Assembly: GCA_937625935.1 (NCBI GenBank) | Contig: OW569349.1 | Location: 186,001 to 250,000, forward strand | Source of the DNA: Tetramitus jugosus | Taxonomy: Eukaryota > Protista > Heterolobosea | Direction: 5' to 3' | Length of the DNA: 64,000 nt | Shown: piece after piece, positions 11,984-28,647 of the stretch | Position numbering within the stretch: position 1 is the stretch's first letter | Layout of the letters: the number at the start of each line of letters is the position of its first letter | Notes under the pieces: model-generated | What the model was told of the DNA's origin: nothing | What the model saw: only the letters and a program-made list of their open reading frames with translations | Database searches by the model: none | Position numbers and translations under genes: made by a program

Positions 11984-13501
11984 ATGATTCCTGTTTCCAA
12001 CTTTTTCCAAAGCTTTGGTGTTTCCTCTCACTTCCATGACCCCTATCACAACTCTCCCTCATATGGCGGTTGCGATCACTGTTACTTTACCCGGAGCTTG
12101 TTTGGCAGACGACAGCAAAACAACAACAACAACAAAAGTTTGAAGGTCAACACTGGTTACAACAATACCAATAACAACAACATTAACAATACCCTCGTCC
12201 GAAAGAATAGTTTTTGCGCTTCGTGCGGCCATTCTCGCAACTCTGCTCTCACCATGCTCGGTGCCATGATGATGGATGTGGAAGGTGACAATGAATACTA
12301 TTATGAGGACGATGAATTGATGACCATTGATTATTTGAGTCTGTCAGAGGACGTTCAAGTGCTCATATTGACCTATCTGGACATTATTGACCTGTACAAG
12401 TTTTCACTCAGTTGCAAGCACGGTGCCTTCTTGGTTCTGAGCAATGAGACGGATGATTTTCTGTGGAAACAAGTCGCGAGTCGATTCAGTATCCAAGAGG
12501 GCGAAGAAGACGATAATTCTGGCTTTTTGGATCCCATGTCCTCCGTAGCTCCATCACCATCGACTCCTGTTGAGTCATCTTCTCTGCGTGCAAAGCTCTT
12601 TAACCTTTTCTCAACATATGTGAACATGAGTTCGATTACGAGTGGCGTTGCGAATTTTGCCATTGGAGGCGGCACAAACGAAGCAACAACAGCTGACACT
12701 AGCGATACCACGTCGAGTTCAGAAAACAGTGGCACGAGTGCAGGTGGCACAAGCAGAGTCAAACAAAGAAGAACATCTGTCATTGTCGAAAGAGACCAAT
12801 GCTTCCAAACCATGGTTGTATTGAAGACGTCAGAAGAGTTGTCCGGATTGGAGAATTTGTGGCGACGAAGAGTGAGACAAGGAGCAAGACTGTTCTGGGA
12901 TAGTAACTCTCGACCATCTGACAGTTCACTCACACTTGGCAACAATAACAAGACGGTGTCTGATAATAGGACATCGAAATGGGATACGATAAGAACCAAT
13001 TGTCCACTGAAGAAGGGAGTAGTCTACTCATGGGAGTACACTCTAGACTATCATGACAATTCTGATTTCAACTCGTATCGTGTGTTTGTTGGAGTAGAGA
13101 GATCAACATATGCTTTTGCAAGTGTAGGATTTGATAAGATTATTGGATTCAATAGTTATGGTGTAGGATACAATTTGGGAGAACAGTGCATCCATCGCAA
13201 TTACATTCATACGTTGACCAACAAGTCCATCTTGCATCAGGATCCAGATGGAAAGTTCAAAACAGGAGATGTCATTACGGTGAAGTTTGATCTCAAGAAT
13301 CTGAATGACAACCAGTGTGCTAGCATGGAGCTCTTCAAGAATGGCAGATGGTTTACCACAATCGACAATATCCCCACAGTGGACGAAATCAAGATGCCTA
13401 TTGTGTACTATCCTGCTATATCTATGATTGGAAAACAAACAGTTTCGATTCGAAGGGGCACCTCGTACAAAGAGTTACTCTATCCTCAATCCAAAAGTTA
13501 A
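11984..13501 (+). CDS. F-box and SPRY-domain protein
   Basis: F-box: LSLSEDVQVLILTYLDIIDLYKFSLSCK..LWK. SPRY: GVVYSWEY, VFVGV, FKTGDVITVKFDL, FKNG, YYPAISM. Confidence 0.8.
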   Translation: MIPVSNFFQSFGVSSHFHDPYHNSPSYGGCDHCYFTRSLFGRRQQNNNNNKSLKVNTGYNNTNNNNINNTLVRKNSFCASCGHSRNSALTMLGAMMMDVEGDNEYYYEDDELMTIDYLSLSEDVQVLILTYLDIIDLYKFSLSCKHGAFLVLSNETDDFLWKQVASRFSIQEGEEDDNSGFLDPMSSVAPSPSTPVESSSLRAKLFNLFSTYVNMSSITSGVANFAIGGGTNEATTADTSDTTSSSENSGTSAGGTSRVKQRRTSVIVERDQCFQTMVVLKTSEELSGLENLWRRRVRQGARLFWDSNSRPSDSSLTLGNNNKTVSDNRTSKWDTIRTNCPLKKGVVYSWEYTLDYHDNSDFNSYRVFVGVERSTYAFASVGFDKIIGFNSYGVGYNLGEQCIHRNYIHTLTNKSILHQDPDGKFKTGDVITVKFDLKNLNDNQCASMELFKNGRWFTTIDNIPTVDEIKMPIVYYPAISMIGKQTVSIRRGTSYKELLYPQSKS

Positions 13502-13783: not shown

Positions 13784-14344
13784 ATCAACCAGTTTGACTG
13801 ACATGGTTTGGGGTTTCGAGCAGGTTATGGAGTTTCTTGTCCAAGTTGATCATTTGAACACATCAGTGATCGCTTGTGTGAAAATCGGTAGGTATTTGAA
13901 ATCAGTTTGAAAGGAGAACCCATAAGATAAAAATGTACGAATCCACAAAAAAATTTTCGTGGTTCGCCATAAAGAGAAAAGGATTTGTAGGAGAAGGGTT
14001 GTATTCACCAGATTATTTTTTCTCTTCCATCTCATTTGCATACAACAATTTAGCCCCAACAGAGCATCCCAATTACCAACAGATCAGCTCAAACCACTTT
14101 TTGCTACCAAACAAACTCCCTCTGCTTCAAAAAAAGCCCTGCCTCTCGCTTTCTCCTATCGCGAAGGAAACACCAAAAATTGTTGAAGATCTTCCCGACA
14201 ACATTCTGGAGTCGACCACCATTCAAGACCCACCAAGACAACGAATTCACGCGTTTGAAAAATAACAACAACACGACCATAATTGTGACGTCGATCATTC
14301 CTACCACCATACATACCCCACAACCGGTCCACCAGAACAACCAC

Positions 14345-15490
14345 ATGAGCTTTACACAAAACAAACACGTGTTGCTCGTTTACTCTACCAACAATAACCA
14401 GCATAATAGCACGAGTGGTAGCAGTAACGATCGCCAAAGGTCTCCAACCACTCTATCCAACAACAAGGTGGACAATAGCTTACAAAAGCTTGCCCCTTCT
14501 CTTCACAGTCCAAAGTCCATTGTTCGTTTCAATCGACACCACCAACACCTTGTTTTCTCTTGTGGCGGCGGAAAAATTTCAAACCGCCAAAGACAAGGCA
14601 GCTCTTTGTCATCTACAGCGGCCCAAGCAACCACCACAAATAGCTGTATTAGAGTCAACCGATTCAACAGCAGCAACATTAGACAGAAAAAGTCAAGAAG
14701 GGCCTCTCCTAGCTCTGCTTCACACCAAGGAATACACAAGGAAAGAAAAAGTTTAGCCAAAAGCTCCAACACAAGAAGAAAAAACTGGAGCAGCACAGCT
14801 ACAACTACAAGCCATAGCAGACAACCACCAGCAGAGCAGCAAAACTTTATGGAAGAGAGTTGTCTCGTTCTGCTCTCTGAAATGAACATTGCGTCACCTG
14901 TAAAGACCATGACTGGCTACAATCATTGCTATCATGAATATGATGATGCCAATGATGACTGTGATCATCTTGTTGATGAAGCTAACAATCACCATCATCA
15001 CAGTGATACTGCCATGAATGAAGACTGTGCTTCTCCTTCCAGTCTCTCTTCAGCACCAGTGGCAGCTGGTTCTCTGACAAGCCAACTTCAGTTTTCATCA
15101 GTTGTGTTTGATCCGTTTGCAAGAGCTCATCATCACCATCATCATGTCTCATCAGCTTTGAGCTCGCCAGAGACAAACATGTGGGTTGCTCCCATGCACT
15201 CCAATTTGATCACATCTGACTTCTTGATGGATCAATACAATTGCAACTATCATTATCATCGTCCTTGTGTCGATGGTGGTGATATTGAGGAAGCAATTGA
15301 GTTTTTTGGTAGTGGAAGTATGTTTCCCATACTTTTGAGCCCCTCCAACACACCAACAACAACAGCAGAAGAAGAAGAAGAGGATTTGAATATGGAATCG
15401 TTGATACGGTCCTCATCTTTGAGTAGAAGTGCGACTTCAACTGAATCCTCTCATTTTTATCATTCTTCATCCTCTGCTGCCTTGGTGTGA
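14345..15490 (+). CDS. Hypothetical low-complexity (S/N/H-rich), probably disordered protein
   Basis: Long ORF (open from 14180; first ATG at 14345) with a basic patch (RQKKSRR..RRKN) and an acidic C-terminus. No recognisable domain. Confidence 0.5.
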   Translation: MSFTQNKHVLLVYSTNNNQHNSTSGSSNDRQRSPTTLSNNKVDNSLQKLAPSLHSPKSIVRFNRHHQHLVFSCGGGKISNRQRQGSSLSSTAAQATTTNSCIRVNRFNSSNIRQKKSRRASPSSASHQGIHKERKSLAKSSNTRRKNWSSTATTTSHSRQPPAEQQNFMEESCLVLLSEMNIASPVKTMTGYNHCYHEYDDANDDCDHLVDEANNHHHHSDTAMNEDCASPSSLSSAPVAAGSLTSQLQFSSVVFDPFARAHHHHHHVSSALSSPETNMWVAPMHSNLITSDFLMDQYNCNYHYHRPCVDGGDIEEAIEFFGSGSMFPILLSPSNTPTTTAEEEEEDLNMESLIRSSSLSRSATSTESSHFYHSSSSAALV

Positions 15491-15934: not shown

Positions 15935-16228
15935 TTACAAGTGTCTCCAGTTTTGTTGAGGATTTCTCTCAATGCCCCTCACTGCCCTTCTGACGAAGCC
16001 ACTTTCGGCAGGTAATTCCTCATCTCTATCGTCATGAGTTATCTGTTTTTCTTCTTTCTCATTGATTTGCACATCTTCTAACTTTGCTTGTTTGGAGTCA
16101 TCAGGTATGTCTGCAGGTAGAATACGATCTTGGGTCTTCTCTTTCTCCTTCGGCAGTTGTGCATCTGAACGTTCGACAGTTCTTTTGGTGTCCAAGTAAT
16201 CTCTAATCATATGAGTAATGTCTGGCAT
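15935..16228 (-). CDS. Small charged hypothetical protein (97 aa)
   Basis: ATG preceded by the AC-rich leader typical of genes here; hydrophilic K/E/D-rich ORF; no recognised homology. Confidence 0.45.
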   Translation of the reverse strand: MPDITHMIRDYLDTKRTVERSDAQLPKEKEKTQDRILPADIPDDSKQAKLEDVQINEKEEKQITHDDRDEELPAESGFVRRAVRGIERNPQQNWRHL

Positions 16229-16417: not shown

Positions 16418-19400
16418 TTACAAAACTTGTTGTTTCTTGAATGATCGAAGGAATTTGTGAAACAAGGCCTCCGAGTCAATTCTGGAGCAAGAAACATCAG
16501 ATCCATTGAGTCCCTCTAACAGATTGTGGCAACTCGTGACTTCTCTCGATTCAGGGAAATCCGAATAGTCGAACATTGACACGATGGGCAGTACTGAGTT
16601 CTCAGGATTTGTCACGGCAGTTTGCTTGACAAACGAAACCCATGCACCATAAGGCAACTGTTCAATCTCATAGCCATATGATTTCATATGTTGGGTCATC
16701 TGGTTGACAGATACTGAAGAGCCAATGGAATTCGTGTTAATCAAATGATAGGACTTGTGTTTTGTGAGAGCAGTGAAAAGCTTGTCTGCTGAAGTTGTTG
16801 TGATTGATACAATAGCTTGTGCAACAAAATCGACTGGAACCATATGTACAAGAGCATTGGATTCTGGAGCAACCTTCAACTGGACAACACCACAAATGTA
16901 TCTTGATATCCATTCTGTGATATTTGAATGACCGGTCTGCGAGTGACCACATATCAATGTTGGACGGAATATACTAATTGGTACTCTACGTTCGTTTCTG
17001 GCAATAGTCAAGATACCTTCTGCAATGTACTTTGACTGACTGTATCCTTGCAATTGTTGGAATGCTGATTCAGGAACGATGGACCTCAAGTCCATATCTT
17101 CTGTCACGTCGTGGTAGAATGGGACACTACCGAGTACTCCTATCGATGAAACAAAGTGCAGTGGTTTCAAATGACTACCTGTGGTGCACAACTTCAACAA
17201 TTCAACGACACTCAAAACGTTTGATTTCTTCAATTCCCAGTAAGATAGCACAAAGTTGACATGTGCTCCATTGTGGTAAACAGCATCGATCGTATCACAT
17301 AAATTAGACCAAGTGTTATCCGATAGACCTAACTTTGCTTGATTCAGATCGCCGCAATAGGCAACAATATTTTCACGCATCTTGGCAGAGAGTGGAGAGA
17401 CATCCATTGTTTCTAAATTTCGAATAATTCTATCATATGCCTCCTTGTCATTGTTCGCTCTCACGATACAGTGTACCTTTAAATCTTGGGAACAGTTGAG
17501 CAGTTCATGCAGGAGAGCTCCTCCCAGAAATCCGGTTGCACCAGTGAGCAGAACGTGGCGAATGGCGTCAGGGGACTTCATTGTGTTCAACAGATTATCT
17601 GGAGTAAATATTGAGTCATCAAGTGTGATTTCCTCTTCCAGGCTGATAGTTTTTGCTGAAGTAAAACAGTTTTTACCACCTGACTTGATCATTTCCAATA
17701 CTTCAGAGAGTGGAACATTTTGTAATAGATCCTTTGCCGATATTTTGATATCGAGTTGTTGTTCTATCAATACAGATAGTTTAGCTGCTGAAATAGAGTC
17801 TCCTCCAACTTCAGCAAAGCTAGCATCAGAGTCAATCGTGTGGCCAATGCCCAATACATTAGTAATGGTGGCAAGGAGATCACTCTCATGCGTTTTCTTC
17901 TCCAGATCATTATACAACTTATCCAATTGTTGCTTATAGACTTTGCTCAAGAATGGACGACAAGACTTTTCAGGTCCTGTGAGCTTTCCATTATCAACAG
18001 TGAATTTTTCCAGTTCGAAGATGAAGCCCTTTGGAATCTCATAGCTGGCAACCTTGGCTCTCTTTCCTATTGCTACAATATCTTGCATGATCATTCGATA
18101 AATCAATGTGCCTTCTTGGCACAGATCTTGAATGGCGCCCTGCAAATTGTTCTCCTTGGCTGCTTTCTCAATGACTTCAACATTTGGAACAATGACAGCC
18201 ACAAGGAACGTTTTCATAGAGTCACCTGAAATAAATATCTGATTAATAAACTCACTGGATAAATAGAAGTTTTCCAGAGGTTCTGGAGCCACGAATTCTC
18301 CTTGACTTAACTTGAAAATATTTTTCAATCGATCAATGATAGTGAGCTTGTTATTCTCACCTATCACTCCAATATCACCAGTATGATAGAAACCATCTTT
18401 GTCGATGAGTTCAGATGTTTTCTCCTCGTCTCTATAATAACCTGGAATAGCTGTAGGTGATTTGACAACGATTTCTCCACGAGGATAGGGCTTATCAGTT
18501 GAGTAGTATCCAAGTTCTGGTACATCAACGAGTTTGATATCAACACCCTCAAATTTTAGTTCTGCTCCTTTATCTTCTCCAACATCAATCCATGATATCG
18601 CTCCAAGTTCTGTACTCGCGTATCCATTGTAAACGCGACACTTGAAACACTTTCTTAAAAAGTCAATGACTTCTTGGCTAGTTGCAGCTCCTCCAGACGT
18701 CATTGCTTGCATTCTACCACCAAGGATGCCACTGAATTGCTTCATTAAATCGACTTCGTTGATCGATTTTTCTGATGTTTTGAGCAAAACGTTCATCTTT
18801 TGGTACTCAGAGTATAGAGAGTTGTACAATCGAGGAGTGGAACTCAATATAGTGGGTTGTAGAGCTCTAAAATCATCGAAAATTTGTGACATGTCACCCG
18901 AAAACATTCCAGTTCTTCCTCCGTTGATCATACCGTTTAGTACATTCAATCGATCTGACATGTGAGATAGTGGACTGAAGCTCAGATTTACAAGCGGATG
19001 AAAAGAGTACATTCCTCGAACCAGTTGATTGTTGAGATTGGAATCAGTGATGATAGCTCCCTTACTCCTGCCAGTCGATCCACTCGTGTAGACAATTGTG
19101 GCTAGGTCATTCGGCTGGATATCCGTGTTAATTGCGAGTCTATTTTCACTACCCGCTCCGATGCGCTCTACATCACTTAATGAAAACAACTGAATCTGAC
19201 ATTCGCGAGCCAAGGCAAACTTTTCGTTATCTTGTTGACTCGTAGTTAGGTCCTCGATCTGAATAATTACCTTTACAGTTGGGCAGAAGCAGGAATCAGC
19301 TTTTCTAGCCTCATTCGCCATACTGATACATTGCATTGTGTACTTGCTCTCACAAACAATTACATCGAGTTCTCCATTGTTAATAATGTGAGCCATATCA

Positions 19401-20275
19401 ACGAGATCCTCTGTGTCAAACTTGGACTTGGGCAAACCAACTGTGACCATTCCTTTCAACAAACATCCAACATCAGTTGTGAACCATTCAACACGATTAA
19501 TAGAGCATATCCCAATGAATCCTCTCTTCTTCCCTCTCGATGGATTCATGTCGTTGATTTTCTGAACAAGCATTTCCAATCCAGTTCCAATACTCAGTGC
19601 CTTCTCATACACTTCATCATACGTTAGCCATGAATACCTTGGTTCCAAAACAACCTTGTTGTTTTCAGATACAATGGGCTTACGATAACCAAGACAAGGT
19701 CTTTCTTTGAAACAAAGAAAAGCTCGACTCAATGATTCAGCTGCACAACGACCAGTGATCAACCACAAGTTCTCAGCTGCATGTCTCCTCGTCTTCATAA
19801 ACAATGGTTCACCGACGAGTGGAAACTCCATTCGTTTTTTTGCCTCCTGACTCCAATGTTCCTCGTCTTTGCTCTCATAGCACCTCATGCAAACAATGAA
19901 CTGATTCTCAAATGTTCCACAATCCAAACAAATCATTTTCTCGTCTCGGGCCTTGATACGCGTACCACAGCTCTCACATCCAAACGACAATTGCCTATAG
20001 TACTGCTCATACTTGTGATCACCTGTCACTTCCAATTCATTGTTGTTACTACTGCTCTTCTTCACTTTGACATATTTCATAAAAGTTGTGGGAACGAATC
20101 CCTTTTCAACGTTGCCATTCTTGGTGGTGACCTTCTCACAATAGGACCACCCGTTGGTTGGATGTTCATTCTCCACCAGAACAAGCTCATTAATTTCACA
20201 TGACATCTCCTGGAAGGTTGTTGTTTCAGGATGGTAGGGCTCTACCAATTCAGCATAATGAGGGAAAAAAGACAT
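16418..20275 (-). CDS. NRPS-like carboxylic acid reductase (adenylation-carrier-thioester reductase) with N-terminal SH3 and ZZ/C1-like zinc finger
   Basis: A domain: YTSGSTGRSKG, GYASTE, KLVDVPELGYYSTDKPYPRGE, FYHTGD, FKLSQGEFVAPE. Carrier: FAEVGGDSISA. R domain: VLLTGATGFLG, HNGAHVN, GYSQSK, VPVDFVA. SH3: PYHP..EMS..GWSY..KGFVPTTFM. Zn finger: CESC..CLDC..CMRC..H. First ATG at 20275. Confidence 0.88.
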   Translation of the reverse strand: MSFFPHYAELVEPYHPETTTFQEMSCEINELVLVENEHPTNGWSYCEKVTTKNGNVEKGFVPTTFMKYVKVKKSSSNNNELEVTGDHKYEQYYRQLSFGCESCGTRIKARDEKMICLDCGTFENQFIVCMRCYESKDEEHWSQEAKKRMEFPLVGEPLFMKTRRHAAENLWLITGRCAAESLSRAFLCFKERPCLGYRKPIVSENNKVVLEPRYSWLTYDEVYEKALSIGTGLEMLVQKINDMNPSRGKKRGFIGICSINRVEWFTTDVGCLLKGMVTVGLPKSKFDTEDLVDMAHIINNGELDVIVCESKYTMQCISMANEARKADSCFCPTVKVIIQIEDLTTSQQDNEKFALARECQIQLFSLSDVERIGAGSENRLAINTDIQPNDLATIVYTSGSTGRSKGAIITDSNLNNQLVRGMYSFHPLVNLSFSPLSHMSDRLNVLNGMINGGRTGMFSGDMSQIFDDFRALQPTILSSTPRLYNSLYSEYQKMNVLLKTSEKSINEVDLMKQFSGILGGRMQAMTSGGAATSQEVIDFLRKCFKCRVYNGYASTELGAISWIDVGEDKGAELKFEGVDIKLVDVPELGYYSTDKPYPRGEIVVKSPTAIPGYYRDEEKTSELIDKDGFYHTGDIGVIGENNKLTIIDRLKNIFKLSQGEFVAPEPLENFYLSSEFINQIFISGDSMKTFLVAVIVPNVEVIEKAAKENNLQGAIQDLCQEGTLIYRMIMQDIVAIGKRAKVASYEIPKGFIFELEKFTVDNGKLTGPEKSCRPFLSKVYKQQLDKLYNDLEKKTHESDLLATITNVLGIGHTIDSDASFAEVGGDSISAAKLSVLIEQQLDIKISAKDLLQNVPLSEVLEMIKSGGKNCFTSAKTISLEEEITLDDSIFTPDNLLNTMKSPDAIRHVLLTGATGFLGGALLHELLNCSQDLKVHCIVRANNDKEAYDRIIRNLETMDVSPLSAKMRENIVAYCGDLNQAKLGLSDNTWSNLCDTIDAVYHNGAHVNFVLSYWELKKSNVLSVVELLKLCTTGSHLKPLHFVSSIGVLGSVPFYHDVTEDMDLRSIVPESAFQQLQGYSQSKYIAEGILTIARNERRVPISIFRPTLICGHSQTGHSNITEWISRYICGVVQLKVAPESNALVHMVPVDFVAQAIVSITTTSADKLFTALTKHKSYHLINTNSIGSSVSVNQMTQHMKSYGYEIEQLPYGAWVSFVKQTAVTNPENSVLPIVSMFDYSDFPESREVTSCHNLLEGLNGSDVSCSRIDSEALFHKFLRSFKKQQVL

Positions 20276-20483
20276 GATAAATAGTGGTTTGTAAGAGTTC
20301 TTTTGTTTTTCGTTGTGTGGAGAGAACTGTGAATTGTTGCTGAAGATAGGCCAGCTGTTTGTTCCAGGGACTTGTTCCAAAAGAGAACTAGAACGGAGTA
20401 ATGTGCTTCAAAGAAAAAACACTTTTCGCCGCTCCAGCAAAAACAAAATTGCGCAACACACAAAAAAACACTAGTTTGAAGAC

Positions 20484-21875
20484 ATGTCTTGCTGCAACAA
20501 CAATAACAACGACAACGACAGTAGCAACTCATCATGCTGCAACAACAACAACACCAACAGTGATCCCAACAACAACTCCACCTGTTGCAACAACAATCAA
20601 CAAATTGTGGTCAAAGAAACTCCGACTCCGACTGCCACCACCACATCCTCTTCTTCTGCTTCTTCTTCTAGTGCAACAACCACTCAAATACCAGACGAGA
20701 TCCTAAACAACACCACACTCAACGAAATTATTGCTCAATCCCTTCCCAGCAACTACAGCTTTGAAATTCACAAAACCATTTGGCGAATTCAACAGTCGTC
20801 AGCCAAGACTGTAGCTCTCCAATTTCCAGAAGGTCTACTGCTGTATGCATGTGTCATCTCTGATATTATTGAAAGATTTTGTAATGTGGCAACGGTGATC
20901 ATGGCTGATGTGACGTATGGTGCATGTTGTATCGATGATTATACAGCACGGGCACTTGGGTGTGATTTTATGGTGCATTATGCGCACAGTTGTCTCATTC
21001 CAGTCAATCAGTGTCTCATGAACATTCTGTACGTGTTTGTCGACATTGGTATCGACATGCGGCATTTTGTGGAGAGCGTAAAAAATAATTTTTCGCGCGA
21101 TCGGAAAATTGCGCTCGTGTCTACGATTCAGTTTGTGGCTTCGTTGAGAGCGGCGAAACCACAGTTTGAAGAGTATTTTTCTGATGTGATTATTCCACAG
21201 GTGAAACCATTGTCTCCTGGTGAAATTCTTGGTTGCACTTCTCCCATGCTTGAATCCAGAGACGTGGTCATCTATGTGGGAGATGGAAGGTTCCATCTCG
21301 AGTCTGTCATGATTCAGAACCCACAATTGGAGGCGTTCAAGTATGATCCCTATTCCAAGAAGTTGACCATTGAAAAGTATGATCATGCAAAGATGCATGG
21401 CTTGAGAAAGACTTCGATTGAACGTGCACAATCGGCTAAAAAGTTTGGTATTATTTTGGGAACGTTGGGCAGACAGGGCAGCCCTCGTATTTTGACTCAT
21501 TTGGAACAATTGTTGAACGAGAAGAATATTCCGTTTATTGTTGTGTTGTTGTCTGAGATTTTCCCTGCAAAATTGGCAATGTTCAACGATGTGGATGCCT
21601 GGGTGCAAATTGCTTGTCCTCGTCTCTCCATTGATTGGGGTTATGCGTTTGATAAGCCATTGTTGTCTCCCTATGAAGCAGAGGTGGCACTGAAGGCAGT
21701 AGAGTGGAAGGAGGTGTACCCAATGGATTTCTATTCGGCAGACGGTGGTGCATGGACTGTGAAGCATGGCGAGAAGCGCGTTGGCAACAAGAATCCAGTC
21801 AACTCTGCAGCCAATAAGAAAATGTTGAGAGAAAAGTTGAGACAGATGAAGAACAAGAAATTACAAATCGAATAA
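20484..21875 (+). CDS. DPH1: 2-(3-amino-3-carboxypropyl)histidine synthase subunit 1 (diphthamide biosynthesis)
   Basis: [79 protein letters not shown]. Confidence 0.96.
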
Positions 21876-27400: not shown

Positions 27401-27657
27401 CTTTGCTGTGTTCGTTGTTTGGATGAACGTTTGTGTGTTTTTCTTCTTATTCGGAGTTTGATGTTTGTTCGTTTTGTTTTCTGGCCAGAGGAGCTGAATT
27501 TTTTGTGCTTCAGAAACCCAACTTCGCGAAGCTGTGATTGATGCTATTTATTTTTCTGCTGCCCGAAACGCTGAGAATTCTCCATTTTCATTCCTCCGTT
27601 TTGAGAGAGGTGCAAGACAAAAAACAACACGCAGCAACAAACGACCAAAGAAACAAC

Positions 27658-28647
27658 ATGCATCGATTACGGATATTGGCCAATCATATTCATCCAAACA
27701 ATGATACACGCGAATCAAACCATCATAATGACAACCACCATTCAATCATCCAACAATCTCCCACACGAAGCACGATCTCTCCTCATTTTTCCGATCCACA
27801 ATTTTCCGCCGTAGAGACAATCTGCGATAATGATCCTTACCGACGTCAATACCAACAGCACCGCATCAAGCAAATCATACGTTACGTGTTGCCTCAGTTG
27901 AAACGTCTCTCCCTCACCTCACCATCATCACCACAACAACAACAAAAATGGCTACTCCAAAAAATGATGCAAAAACAACACAATTTCAACATGATTGAAA
28001 TTCTAATTGCCATCTCCATTATCGTCACCTTTTCTGGTCTCACAGGCACAGTATTCGCTCAAAAATATGAAGAAACAAGAGTGAGTAATGCTCAATTGGA
28101 TCTCGCTCGTATTCAAGAGGGATTAGTCATGTATTATACGCGAAAAGCAACGTATCCATTGGATTTGGAAGAGTTGTTGGAGAATGGTGATTTGAATAAA
28201 GTACCAAAAGATCCATGGGGAACAGATTATCTCTATGTTCCTCATTTGGACTGGGCGAGATTTGTTCGGTTATTGGGCACTTCAAGTAGTAGTGGGAGTA
28301 GTTCTAATGCAGGTGGTGGTGGTCAAAGTGGTCAAACACAAAAAAGGACGAGTGCATCAATGAATAGCAACATGATTTATTACAAGGAAGCATTGAAGAG
28401 AATGAGAAACAGTTTGATGAATCTGCCAGAGAGCATTGAGAAGATTCAAGTGTTGGCCATGGCAATGGATCAACCGTTTTGTATCTGTGTGGGCACTAAA
28501 TTGCCCAGATTTCCACCAAAGATTGATACGAATGTGACGCGAGAGAAGATCAAGTATGTGGCACAGTTGATGAAGATGGCACGGGAGCGGAGTGAAGGTG
28601 AGTTGAATGAGTTGGTGACAGAGGTGTTGAACATTGCAAAGGAATAG
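27658..28647 (+). CDS. gspG: Eukaryotic GspG-like major pseudopilin (type II secretion system-derived, mitochondrial system); start uncertain (27541/27658/27964)
   Basis: Pilin-like N-helix NFNMIEILIAISIIVTFSGLTGTVF (from 27982), then AQLDLARIQEGLVMYY..YP..LEELL..VPKDPWGTDYLY, the T2SS GspG core with DPWG. Confidence 0.85.
   Translation: MHRLRILANHIHPNNDTRESNHHNDNHHSIIQQSPTRSTISPHFSDPQFSAVETICDNDPYRRQYQQHRIKQIIRYVLPQLKRLSLTSPSSPQQQQKWLLQKMMQKQHNFNMIEILIAISIIVTFSGLTGTVFAQKYEETRVSNAQLDLARIQEGLVMYYTRKATYPLDLEELLENGDLNKVPKDPWGTDYLYVPHLDWARFVRLLGTSSSSGSSSNAGGGGQSGQTQKRTSASMNSNMIYYKEALKRMRNSLMNLPESIEKIQVLAMAMDQPFCICVGTKLPRFPPKIDTNVTREKIKYVAQLMKMARERSEGELNELVTEVLNIAKE

What the first reader, a model, noticed from the sequence alone, without database searches (positions are those of the whole stretch)
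16418..20275. Carboxylic acid reductase (A-T-R) fused to SH3 and ZZ/C1-like zinc-finger signalling modules
Seen: one intronless ORF reading SH3 (~20260-20075), a Cys/His finger (H-x12-CxxC-x12-CxxC-x9-CxxC-x7-H, ~20020-19855), an acyl-adenylating domain, a carrier domain with intact GGDS serine (codon 17795-17797) and an NAD(P)H thioester reductase with TGATGFLG and YxxxK. Known: A-T-R enzymes (actinobacterial and fungal CARs, Lys2) reduce acids to aldehydes and need phosphopantetheinylation. The KLVDVPELGY..TDKPYPRGE and KLSQGEFV motifs are shared with long-chain acyl-CoA synthetases and actinobacterial CARs. I know of no CAR with SH3 and Zn-finger docking modules. Inference: a fatty-aldehyde/alcohol-producing enzyme recruited by protein interactions (e.g. 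to cortex, phagosome or peroxisome), i.e. a localised or regulated lipid-signal synthase.
Basis: partly seen in the sequence, partly recalled or inferred. Interest (0 to 1): 0.82.

Follow-up and report, generated by a model that had tools for sequence, protein, structure and literature searches.

The report
SH3–ZZ-tagged carboxylic acid reductase-like enzyme
A soil amoeba (probably a heterolobosean) carries an expressed, intron-free gene that joins a carboxylic-acid-reducing enzyme to two protein-docking modules (an SH3 domain and a worn ZZ zinc finger); the combination is real, rare and unstudied, but it belongs to a wider family of ZZ-tagged reductases in amoebae.

Summary
Window 16418-20275 (minus strand) is one 1285-aa ORF with the order SH3, ZZ-like Cys/His finger, adenylation (A), carrier (T), thioester reductase (R). 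Pfam and NCBIfam confirm A, T and R, and all the catalytic motifs checked are intact.

- **SH3:** below Pfam's threshold, but supported by profile searches and by an AlphaFold model (VIA Z 9.2; the top 50 hits are all SH3).
- **Finger:** a divergent ZZ domain, not C1. hhalign gives 94.5% against the ZZ domains of paralogues.
- **Expression:** soil metatranscriptome contigs cover the whole ORF without joints. One ends 82 nt upstream of the first ATG, and the intergenic spacer is absent from all three RNA runs laid. Of 40 listed strain variants, 31 are synonymous.
- **Distribution:** not unique. The genome has three paralogues (two ZZ-A-T-R, one jr-ZPR1-A-T-R). SH3-ZZ-A-T-R also occurs in Rhizamoeba saxonica, one NCBI assembly and two metagenome or sequencing-run contigs, and these form one clade (99/99). 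Only about 8 such proteins turned up among 1.84 billion representatives. I found no paper on them.
- **Family:** it works like a CAR but is not an equivalog (538 vs 1300 bits). Its R domain is nearer NRPS/PKS terminal reductases.

Substrate, product and the role of SH3-ZZ are inferred, not shown. I rate it a new variant of a known kind, of moderate interest.

The parts
16418..20275 (-). Complete intron-free coding sequence (1285 aa plus stop) of the SH3-ZZ-A-T-R protein
   Evidence: ORF list and translation. One RNA contig spans 16300-20357 with no joints. 31 of 40 listed strain variants are synonymous.
20060..20275 (-). SH3 domain (aa 1-72). It keeps Y14, W43, P62 and F65 at hallmark ligand-groove positions.
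   Evidence: SH3_9 23.2 bits, below GA. In a profile search of the PDB, 40 of 42 hits are SH3. The profile also hits 9-SH3 proteins at E 5e-15. AF2 model: Foldseek target-normalised TM-score (TMt) 0.86, VIA Z 9.2, rmsd 1.7 A over 62 aa.
19985..20059 (-). Linker with a beta-hairpin and a conserved Y-E-x-Y-Y-R helix (aa 73-97) that marks the SH3-ZZ clade
   Evidence: Alignments A2 and A7: Y89, E90, Y93 and R94 are invariant among the three closest orthologues, and Y93 is invariant in all seven sequences. The model places a helix at 88-95.
19826..19984 (-). Divergent ZZ-type zinc finger (aa 98-150). It has three CxxC pairs (100-103, 116-119, 129-132) plus H140, and a 4-residue insertion relative to the paralogue ZZ domains in the alignment.
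   Evidence: hhalign of the orthologue finger profile against paralogue ZZ domains: 94.5%, E 8e-8. The joint profile hits solved ZZ domains of BIG, PRT1, HERC2, KCMF1 and p62 at E 4e-9 to 2e-7. ZZ passes GA in P0072, L003 and L005. The window finger alone gets no ZZ hit. Model pLDDT is 78-95 here.
17906..19738 (-). Adenylation domain of the ACSL/CAR type (aa 180-790), with P-loop 396-406, YHTGD 630-634, an acyl-CoA-synthetase-like signature block around 620-665, and the invariant A10 lysine
   Evidence: Pfam AMP-binding E 3e-50. NF041592 aligns over aa 184-1246. PDB CAR A domain 6OZ1 scores 244 bits. Tree: all A-T-R proteins are separated from ACSLs at 99/97. Invariant columns in A8.
17690..17878 (-). 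Carrier (T/PCP) domain (aa 800-862); the phosphopantetheine serine S827 is at codon 17797-17795
   Evidence: Pfam PP-binding 41.6 bits, above GA 20.8. GGDS at 824-827. G-D-S is invariant in A8. Two PPTase genes (PF01648) are present in the same genome.
16424..17557 (-). NAD(P)H-dependent thioester reductase domain (aa 907-1284), with TGATGFLG 911-918 and YSQSK 1078-1082
   Evidence: TIGR01746 277 bits, above its 213 cut-off; NAD_binding_4 E 1.6e-63. Best solved match is MxaA 4U7W at 204 bits, ahead of CAR 5MSO at 120 bits. The R tree places it outside the CAR reductase clade.
20276..20483 (-). 5' leader (to about 20357) and a 208-bp divergent intergenic/promoter region shared with the Dph1 gene (20484-21875, plus strand)
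   Evidence: The X1 RNA contig ends at 20357. The three RNA runs have no contig between 20358 and 20549, whereas the organism's own run X16 covers that stretch. There is no ATG between 20357 and 20275. Dph1 is identified by Pfam.

Best explanation
This is a genuine, transcribed, single-exon gene of a soil heterolobosean-like amoeba.

**Enzyme core.** Residues 180-1285 are a carboxylic-acid-reductase-like A-T-R machine.
- The ACSL/CAR-type adenylation domain activates a carboxylic acid with ATP. The acid is most likely a medium- or long-chain fatty acid.
- The acyl group is passed to the phosphopantetheine arm on Ser827 of the carrier domain.
- The C-terminal short-chain-dehydrogenase-type reductase releases it with NAD(P)H as an aldehyde. 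It may reduce it further to the alcohol, because this R domain resembles four-electron NRPS/PKS terminal reductases more than CAR reductases.

**N-terminal module.** Residues 1-150 are a compact SH3 plus degenerate ZZ module, inherited as a unit within a small eukaryotic clade. The most likely role is protein-protein docking: SH3 onto a proline-rich partner, with the ZZ-derived finger as a second contact or scaffold. That would place or gate the reductase at a particular site or complex.

**Shown:** the architecture, intact catalytic motifs, RNA covering the whole ORF, purifying selection, and conservation of the fusion.
**Inferred:** the substrate class, the product, and the docking role.
For: **Architecture and motifs:**

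**Homology to solved CARs over A-T-R:** 373 bits, E 3e-110.

**A-domain tree (careful):** A-T-R proteins are separated from ACSLs at 99/97, and the SH3-ZZ clade is supported at 99/99.

**SH3:**
- 40 of 42 hits of the profile in the PDB are SH3 domains.
- The profile hits true multi-SH3 proteins at E 5e-15.
- The AF2 model has mean pLDDT 76; all top 50 Foldseek and VIA matches are SH3, with Z 9.2 and rmsd 1.7 A.

**ZZ:**
- hhalign 94.5% against paralogue ZZ domains.
- The joint profile hits solved ZZ domains.
- ZZ passes Pfam GA in P0072, L003 and L005.

**Expression and gene model:**
- One 4454-nt metatranscriptome contig spans 16300-20357 at 99% identity without joints.
- Contigs in two more RNA runs bridge the N-terminal module to the A domain: X3 covers SH3, the finger and the A start; X2 begins just downstream of the SH3 coding region.
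- All three RNA runs skip the intergenic spacer that the organism's own run covers.
- No upstream ATG lies in the leader.
- 31 of 40 listed variants are synonymous, including 6 of 9 in aa 1-170.

**Fusion conserved:** in Rhizamoeba saxonica, P0001, P0072 and P0076.

**Priming:** PPTase genes are present in the genome.

**Fatty-acid inference:** the A domain's nearest non-A-T-R relatives are long-chain acyl-CoA synthetases. It also carries the acyl-CoA synthetase signature block (my own knowledge of the FACS motif).
Against: - No biochemical data exist for any member of this eukaryotic family.
- The protein falls far short of the CAR equivalog cut-off (538 vs 1300 bits), and its R domain lies outside the CAR reductase clade. 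Substrate and product therefore cannot be transferred from CARs.
- SH3 is below Pfam's threshold, and the first aromatic residue of the ALYDY-type motif is missing.
- The finger is decaying within the clade. Rhizamoeba has lost the second CxxC pair. P0075 and P0076 have lost most of the cysteines. In this clade the position after the first Cys is not the Asp seen in most of the paralogue ZZ domains, a residue that solved ZZ domains use to bind peptide N-termini (my recollection). A canonical ZZ function is therefore doubtful.
- The RNA evidence comes from assembled metatranscriptome contigs. These cannot show strand, true ends or abundance, and they may contain DNA.
- No partner is known. The alcohol acetyltransferase gene that sits next to the P0001 orthologue is unlinked in this genome.
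Confidence: 0.6

Rival explanations
1. The SH3-ZZ module acts within the enzyme or between its subunits. It would act as an autoinhibitory latch, a dimerisation element, or a dock for the mobile T or R domain, rather than as a localisation tag for outside partners.
For: The ZZ-derived finger sits directly against the A domain in every family member. It is kept as a fold even where its zinc ligands are lost, which fits a structural role. The stretch from the finger into the A-domain start is conserved, with H165 and W171 invariant. CARs are known to depend on large domain movements (titles of the 5MSO-family structures; my own knowledge).
Against: The model gives low confidence after residue 170 and says nothing about contacts with the A domain. 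SH3 keeps most residues of the ligand groove. The only PxxP in the protein (aa 13-16) lies inside the SH3 domain itself; no other candidate intramolecular ligand was seen.
Confidence: 0.22
2. The enzyme belongs to secondary or specialised metabolism. It would reduce a non-fatty acid (aromatic, polyketide-derived or other) to an aldehyde or alcohol building block, as fungal NRPS-like A-T-R enzymes do.
For: The R domain is closest to NRPS/PKS terminal reductases: MxaA at 204 bits, a type I PKS reductase at 165 bits, and cyanobacterial NRPS reductases at 32-35% identity. Actinobacterial CARs themselves accept aromatic acids (my own knowledge). Four paralogues in one genome suggest diversified substrates.
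Against: The A domain is of the ACSL/CAR type, not the amino-acid or aryl-acid NRPS type. It has no AMP-binding_C hit, and its nearest non-fused relatives are long-chain acyl-CoA synthetases. The neighbouring genes are housekeeping genes (Dph1, ATG2, a TPR protein), not a biosynthetic cluster.
Confidence: 0.18
3. The fusion is a gene-model artefact. On this view the SH3 and finger codons are untranslated leader or a separate small gene, and the enzyme starts at an internal methionine.
For: SH3 and the finger are weak in Pfam. Contigs cannot prove transcript ends.
Against: There is one open frame with no stop or intron. The first ATG of the RNA contig is codon 1. Variants in aa 1-170 are mostly synonymous. 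The same N-terminal module is fused in frame in at least four other proteins, including a transcriptome-derived one. Only 208 bp separate the start codon from the divergent Dph1 gene.
Confidence: 0.03
4. It is a Lys2-type alpha-aminoadipate reductase or another amino-acid-activating NRPS-like enzyme.
For: It has the same A-T-R order. TIGR03443 matches at 227 bits.
Against: That match covers only the T-R part (aa 689-1242) and lies far below the 1030-bit cut-off. The A domain groups with CAR and ACSL enzymes.
Confidence: 0.02

Closest known systems
Actinobacterial type I carboxylic acid reductases (CAR/FadD9; NCBIfam NF041592; structures 5MSO, 5MSC, 5MSP)
   Same: Same A-T-R order, and alignable over almost the full CAR model (positions 40-1118). 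They are the best full-length solved matches (E 3e-110). P-loop, A10 lysine, Ppant serine, Rossmann motif and Y/K catalytic pair are all conserved. The A domain falls on the CAR side of the ACSL/A-T-R split.
   Different: The window protein scores 538 bits against a 1300-bit equivalog cut-off. It lies outside the bacterial CAR clade in both the A and R trees, whereas a paralogue in the same genome, L005, is sister to that clade. The R domain lacks CAR-type affinity. It also has a 170-residue SH3-ZZ extension that none of the bacterial homologues recovered here carries at that position.
NRPS/PKS terminal thioester reductases (TIGR01746; MxaA 4U7W, type I PKS reductase 8V1X)
   Same: The R domain passes the TIGR01746 cut-off. 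Its best solved match is MxaA (204 bits, aligned end to end), and in the tree it mixes with cyanobacterial and myxobacterial reductases.
   Different: Those reductases terminate multimodular assembly lines. Here the R domain follows a single fatty-acyl-type A-T pair.
ZZ-A-T-R proteins of amoebae (paralogues L003 and L005 in this genome; Balamuthia mandrillaris 'long chain acyl-CoA synthetase 7' P0006; the 2xZZ protein P0020)
   Same: A ZZ finger sits immediately N-terminal to the same A-T(-R) core, and the proteins belong to the same gene family.
   Different: These proteins lack the SH3 domain. Their ZZ domains pass Pfam GA and mostly keep the Cys-Asp start of the finger. The window's finger is more diverged and carries a 4-residue insertion.
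SH3-ZZ-A-T-R orthologues (P0001 from a JGI metagenome, 54% identity; Rhizamoeba saxonica EP01130_P001682, 37%; P0072; P0076 from GCA_041937235.1)
   Same: Identical domain order, including the conserved Y-E-x-Y-Y-R helix between SH3 and the finger. They form a monophyletic A-domain clade at 99/99.
   Different: Zinc ligands are progressively lost in Rhizamoeba and in P0075/P0076. All of these proteins are uncharacterised.
Eukaryotic long-chain acyl-CoA synthetases (ACSL/LACS)
   Same: The A domain shares the fatty-acyl-CoA-synthetase-type motifs, and this genome's own ACSLs are 29-34% identical to it.
   Different: ACSLs are a separate clade (99/97). They have no carrier or reductase domain and hand the acyl group to free CoA.

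Membership tests
Type I carboxylic acid reductase (NF041592 equivalog) | Whole-protein score above the curated cut-off (1300 bits) | tested here: not met
   538 bits. All four paralogues in this genome score 519-709 bits.
Type I carboxylic acid reductase (NF041592 equivalog) | A-T-R domain order with an ANL adenylation domain, a Ppant serine, and an NADPH Rossmann motif plus Y/K pair | tested here: met
   Pfam and NCBIfam domains. Motif positions. Invariant columns in A8.
Type I carboxylic acid reductase (NF041592 equivalog) | A and R domains fall inside the bacterial CAR clades | tested here: not met
   A tree: the bacterial CARs plus paralogue L005 form a 100/99 clade that excludes the window protein. 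R tree: the CAR reductases plus L005 are separated at 99, with the window protein among NRPS/PKS reductases (quick tree).
Type I carboxylic acid reductase (NF041592 equivalog) | ATP- and NADPH-dependent reduction of free acids to aldehydes after phosphopantetheinylation | not testable with these tools
   This needs an enzyme assay. PPTase genes are present in the genome.
Thioester reductase domain (TIGR01746) | Score above the curated cut-off (213 bits) | tested here: met
   277 bits over aa 907-1284.
SH3 domain | Pfam SH3 model above its gathering score | tested here: not met
   SH3_9 23.2 vs 30 bits; SH3_2 15.2 vs 21.8 bits. The orthologues are also sub-threshold.
SH3 domain | Sequence-profile homology to bona fide SH3 domains | tested here: met
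   40 of 42 PDB hits are SH3 domains, the best at E 8.6e-4. 9-SH3 proteins are hit at E 5e-15 and 4e-14, and a single SH3 protein at E 6e-4, in a library of 1.84 billion proteins.
SH3 domain | Five-stranded SH3 beta-barrel fold | tested here: met
   The AF2 model was built from 7 family sequences only, and pLDDT is about 62-85 over aa 1-80. All top 50 Foldseek hits are SH3-fold, with target-normalised TM-score (TMt) up to 0.88. VIA gives Z 9.2, rmsd 1.7 A over 62 of 63 residues.
SH3 domain | Ligand-groove residues (ALYDY aromatics, conserved Trp, Pro-x-x-Tyr) | tested here: inconclusive
   Y14, W43, P62 and F65 are kept and are invariant among the orthologues. The first ALYDY aromatic is replaced. 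Binding itself was not tested.
ZZ-type zinc finger (PF00569) | Pfam ZZ model above its gathering score (21.4 bits) | tested here: not met
   The window finger gets no ZZ hit. P0001 scores 20.3 bits. P0072 (23.6), L003 (22.5), L005 (25.6) and Balamuthia (34.4) all pass.
ZZ-type zinc finger (PF00569) | Profile-level homology and the same position as recognised ZZ domains | tested here: met
   hhalign 94.5%, E 8e-8, against paralogue ZZ domains at the same position before the A domain. The joint profile hits solved ZZ domains at E 4e-9.
ZZ-type zinc finger (PF00569) | Two cross-braced zinc sites (pairs 1+3; pair 2 plus His/His) | tested here: inconclusive
   The site 1 cysteines (100, 103, 129, 132) are present and conserved in most members. 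Site 2 has C116 and C119 but only one His (H140), and it is lost in relatives. Metal content was not tested.
C1 (phorbol-ester/DAG-type) domain | Pfam C1 match or an H-x12-C...C-x2-C...H...C C1 ligand pattern | tested here: not met
   The window finger gets no C1 hit at E up to 10. H87 is not conserved in the orthologues.
Lys2 / alpha-aminoadipate reductase (TIGR03443) | Score above the 1030-bit cut-off with a matching A domain | tested here: not met
   227 bits, covering only the T-R part at aa 689-1242.

The most novel reading that the evidence does not exclude
A small clade of amoebae, spanning Discoba and Amoebozoa, has turned a free-standing carboxylic acid reductase into a spatially addressed lipid-aldehyde or lipid-alcohol synthase by fusing it to an SH3-ZZ adaptor. 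Reduced fatty-acid products would then be made only where a proline-rich partner sits, for example at the cortex, a phagosome or a trafficking complex. In addition, the eukaryotic ZZ-CAR family, one of whose members is sister to all the bacterial CARs sampled here, may record an inter-domain gene transfer linked to the origin of bacterial CARs.
Probability: 0.15. Interest if true: 0.8.

Novelty: new variant of a known kind. Interest (0 to 1): 0.55.

Why it matters
CAR-type A-T-R enzymes are known as soluble, stand-alone bacterial and fungal enzymes and are widely used as biocatalysts. To my knowledge none has been described with signalling-type docking domains. My literature searches found no paper on amoebal CARs or on a CAR carrying a ZZ domain.

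A conserved, expressed SH3-ZZ-reductase would be a first handle on localised or regulated production of fatty aldehydes or alcohols in free-living amoebae. Those products feed ether lipids, waxes and possibly signals.

The wider ZZ-A-T-R family also matters:
- it supplies new, sequence-distant eukaryotic CAR-like enzymes for biocatalysis;
- one paralogue is sister to all the bacterial CARs sampled here, which raises a testable question about transfer between eukaryotes and bacteria.

The limits are plain. Substrate, product and partner are all unknown.

Tried and rejected
- **Word search on the N-terminus:** restricted to residues 1-200 it found nothing. The ESM Atlas feature search on residues 1-165 gave no usable hit. 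Both blanks were uninformative, because the exhaustive profile search later found relatives.
- **First AF2 run:** with 3 sequences the model was too poor to use (pLDDT 48). It was repeated with 7 sequences.
- **Finger alone or with 3 orthologues against the PDB:** only generic zinc-ribbon noise came back, with PRT1 ZZ at E 0.14. The ZZ call therefore rests on the paralogue comparison.
- **ZZ fold:** the Foldseek and VIA lists were filled by SH3 hits, so the fold of the ZZ part was not tested independently.
- **C1 domain:** rejected.
- **Lys2:** rejected.
- **Peroxisomal targeting by a C-terminal tripeptide:** the protein ends in ...QQVL, so no PTS1-type tripeptide is present.
- **Linkage to an alcohol acetyltransferase:** the orthologue P0001 has an AATase-family gene just downstream. 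In this genome the only homologue lies on another contig, so no conserved operon-like pairing exists.
- **Control genomes:** the search for NF041592 yielded no true CAR for comparison. Actinobacterial CARs were taken from genome contigs instead.
- **Literature:** four searches found no relevant paper; one further broad query was unspecific and one attempt failed on a term-length error.

Full report
**1. The observation**

The minus strand of the window carries one open frame from an in-frame stop at 20381-20383 down to the stop at 16418-16420. Its first ATG is at 20275, which gives 1285 residues.

Pfam finds three domains:
- AMP-binding at aa 206-614 (E 3e-50);
- PP-binding at aa 800-862 (41.6 bits);
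- NAD_binding_4 at aa 910-1155 (E 1.6e-63).

NCBIfam adds two matches. The thioester-reductase domain TIGR01746 scores 277 bits, above its cut-off. The carboxylic acid reductase model NF041592 aligns almost end to end at 538 bits, far below its 1300-bit equivalog cut-off.

These are the P-loop at 396-406, YHTGD at 630-634, GGDS at 824-827 (serine codon 17797-17795), TGATGFLG at 911-918 and YSQSK at 1078-1082. The script also confirmed the exact Cys/His spacing of the finger.

**2. The N-terminal modules**

*SH3.* Taken alone, residues 1-75 reach only 23.2 bits with SH3_9 (GA 30). Three further lines of evidence settle the matter.
- A profile of the window plus two orthologues, searched against PDB sequences, returned 42 hits. 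Forty are SH3 domains; the best are Nbp2 and Pex13 at E 8.6e-4.
- The exhaustive profile search of 1.84 billion representatives found, apart from relatives of this protein, genuine nine-SH3 proteins at E 5e-15 and 4e-14.
- An AlphaFold model built from seven family members only has mean pLDDT 76. All top 50 matches in both structure searches are SH3 domains. Foldseek gives TM-scores normalised to the target of up to 0.88. VIA gives Z 9.2 at rmsd 1.7 A over 62 of 63 residues.

Y14, W43, P62 and F65 occupy hallmark groove positions and are invariant among the orthologues. The first aromatic of the ALYDY-type motif is not kept.

*The finger.* On its own it matches neither ZZ nor C1. It does align with ZZ domains that stand at the same place in paralogues and relatives.
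- A profile-profile comparison of the orthologue fingers against those ZZ domains gives 94.5% probability, E 8e-8.
- The ZZ model passes Pfam's threshold in P0072, L003, L005 and the Balamuthia protein. It scores 20.3 bits, just under, in the closest orthologue.
- The joint profile hits solved ZZ domains of BIG, PRT1, HERC2, KCMF1 and p62.

The finger is therefore a diverged ZZ. It has a four-residue insertion, only one candidate His for the second zinc site, and Glu where most of the paralogue ZZ domains have the Asp that follows the first Cys. Within the clade the finger is decaying: Rhizamoeba has lost the second CxxC pair, and P0075 and P0076 have lost most cysteines.

**3. Is the fusion expressed?**

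The gene lies 208 bp from a divergently oriented Dph1 gene. Three soil metatranscriptomes from different studies hold the locus at about 99% identity.
- In X1 a single 4454-nt contig runs from 20357 through the whole ORF and past 16300, with no joints.
- In X2 and X3 contigs bridge the N-terminal module into the A domain (18732-20042 and 19136-20287). The X3 contig spans SH3 and the finger. The X2 contig begins just downstream of the SH3 coding region.
- No contig in any of the three RNA runs covers 20358-20549, the intergenic spacer and the first bases of Dph1. The organism's own run X16 does cover it. That pattern is what RNA rather than contaminating DNA would give.

There is no ATG between 20357 and 20275, so codon 1 is the first AUG of that RNA.

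Of the 40 strain differences listed, 31 are synonymous, including 6 of the 9 in residues 1-170.

Caveats: these are assembled contigs. They cannot show strand, true ends or abundance. The X1 contig also continues over a small downstream ORF.

**4. Organism and family**

The neighbouring Dph1 protein is most like that of Acrasis kona (69%), then Naegleria (61-63%), among named organisms. A GspG-like gene nearby passes the Pfam T2SSG threshold. A heterolobosean is the likely source. The genome is 26.35 Mb in 56 contigs.

The genome has three more full-length A-T-R paralogues:
- L003, with a ZZ domain;
- L005, with a ZZ domain;
- L004, with a ZPR1 jelly-roll domain in place of the ZZ.

ZZ-A-T(-R) also occurs in Balamuthia mandrillaris and in an unnamed ENA metagenome contig.

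The full SH3-ZZ-A-T-R order is found in four other full-length proteins, plus fragments:
- P0001, from a JGI metagenome contig of 147 kb (54% identity);
- Rhizamoeba saxonica (Amoebozoa, 37%);
- P0072, from an assembled contig of a public sequencing run (Logan);
- P0076, from assembly GCA_041937235.1.

Beyond these, the N-terminal profile found only SH3-repeat proteins and weak hits among 1.84 billion representatives. The architecture is rare but not unique.

**5. Trees**

A careful maximum-likelihood tree of the A domain (27 rows, 576 columns) gives three well-supported results:
- all A-T-R proteins are separated from ACSLs (99/97);
- the five SH3-ZZ proteins form one clade (99/99);
- paralogue L005 is sister to the bacterial CARs (100/99).

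I left out NRPS-type A domains, because they did not align at E 1e-5 or better.

A quick tree of the R domain again joins L005 with the bacterial CAR reductases (99). It leaves the window's R domain among NRPS/PKS terminal reductases, unresolved. This agrees with the PDB ranking for the R domain alone, where MxaA scores 204 bits and CAR 120 bits.

The window protein therefore works like a CAR but fails the membership tests for the type I CAR equivalog.

**6. Mechanism**

*Shown:* intact adenylation, carrier and reductase motifs, and two PPTase genes in the genome.

*Inferred from family knowledge:* the enzyme forms an acyl-adenylate, loads the acyl group on the Ppant arm of Ser827, and releases it by NAD(P)H-dependent reduction.

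*Substrate.* A fatty-acid substrate is the best guess. The A domain's nearest unfused relatives are long-chain acyl-CoA synthetases, and it carries their signature block (my own knowledge).

*Product.* The choice between aldehyde and alcohol is open. MxaA-type reductases carry out four-electron reduction (my own knowledge).

*Role of SH3-ZZ.* No partner or site is known, and there is no C-terminal PTS1-type tripeptide. Solved ZZ domains are mostly readers of peptide N-termini (entry titles). The window's finger lacks the usual acidic residue and is degenerating in relatives. A scaffold role, or a second contact beside the SH3, therefore seems more likely than canonical N-terminus reading.

**7. 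Novelty**

Four literature searches found nothing on amoebal CARs or on a CAR with a ZZ domain. The searched library omits most subscription-journal papers.

I rate this a new variant of a known kind: a real, expressed, conserved but rare fusion of a CAR-like reductase with an SH3-ZZ module, embedded in a broader and equally unstudied eukaryotic ZZ-CAR family.

Noticed in passing
L004:1273-5088 (-) = G000 contig C7, about 587.7-591.5 kb: A paralogue of the reductase carries a ZPR1 jelly-roll domain (PF22794, 60 bits) instead of a ZZ finger in front of the same A-T-R core. This is another unusual N-terminal module on this enzyme family.
   Followed up: partly
L005:1204-5004 (+) = G000 contig C7, about 331.3-335.1 kb: The ZZ-A-T-R paralogue L005 is sister to all the bacterial CARs sampled here in both the A tree (100/99) and the R tree (99). 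It also has the highest NF041592 score in the genome (709 bits). This suggests gene transfer between bacteria and eukaryotes in one direction or the other.
   Followed up: partly
window 15935-16228 (-): A 97-aa acidic/lysine-rich ORF lies 190 nt downstream of the reductase stop. It sits on the same 4454-nt metatranscriptome contig, which ends about 30 nt after it. It could be a long 3' UTR, an overlapping transcript or a small gene.
   Followed up: no
L001:6635-7693 (+): In the metagenome contig that carries the closest orthologue (P0001), an alcohol-acetyltransferase-family gene (PF07247, 38 bits) lies just downstream of the reductase. In the window's genome the only homologue is on contig C46, so the pairing is not conserved.
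   Followed up: yes
window 27538-28647 (+): An ORF with a T2SS pseudopilin GspG domain passes the Pfam threshold (24.5 bits vs 21). This fits the mitochondrial T2SS-derived system reported from heteroloboseans, jakobids and malawimonads (my own knowledge). I used it here only as a clue to the lineage.
   Followed up: partly
window 20320: The soil strain in run X1 has a 2-nt deletion in the 5' leader. Within the ORF its differences are substitutions, mostly synonymous. This is consistent with the leader being non-coding.
   Followed up: no
window 14180-15490 (+) and 11984-13501 (+): Two long ORFs (436 and 505 aa) are rich in low-complexity Asn, Ser, Thr and His runs and have no Pfam match.
   Followed up: no
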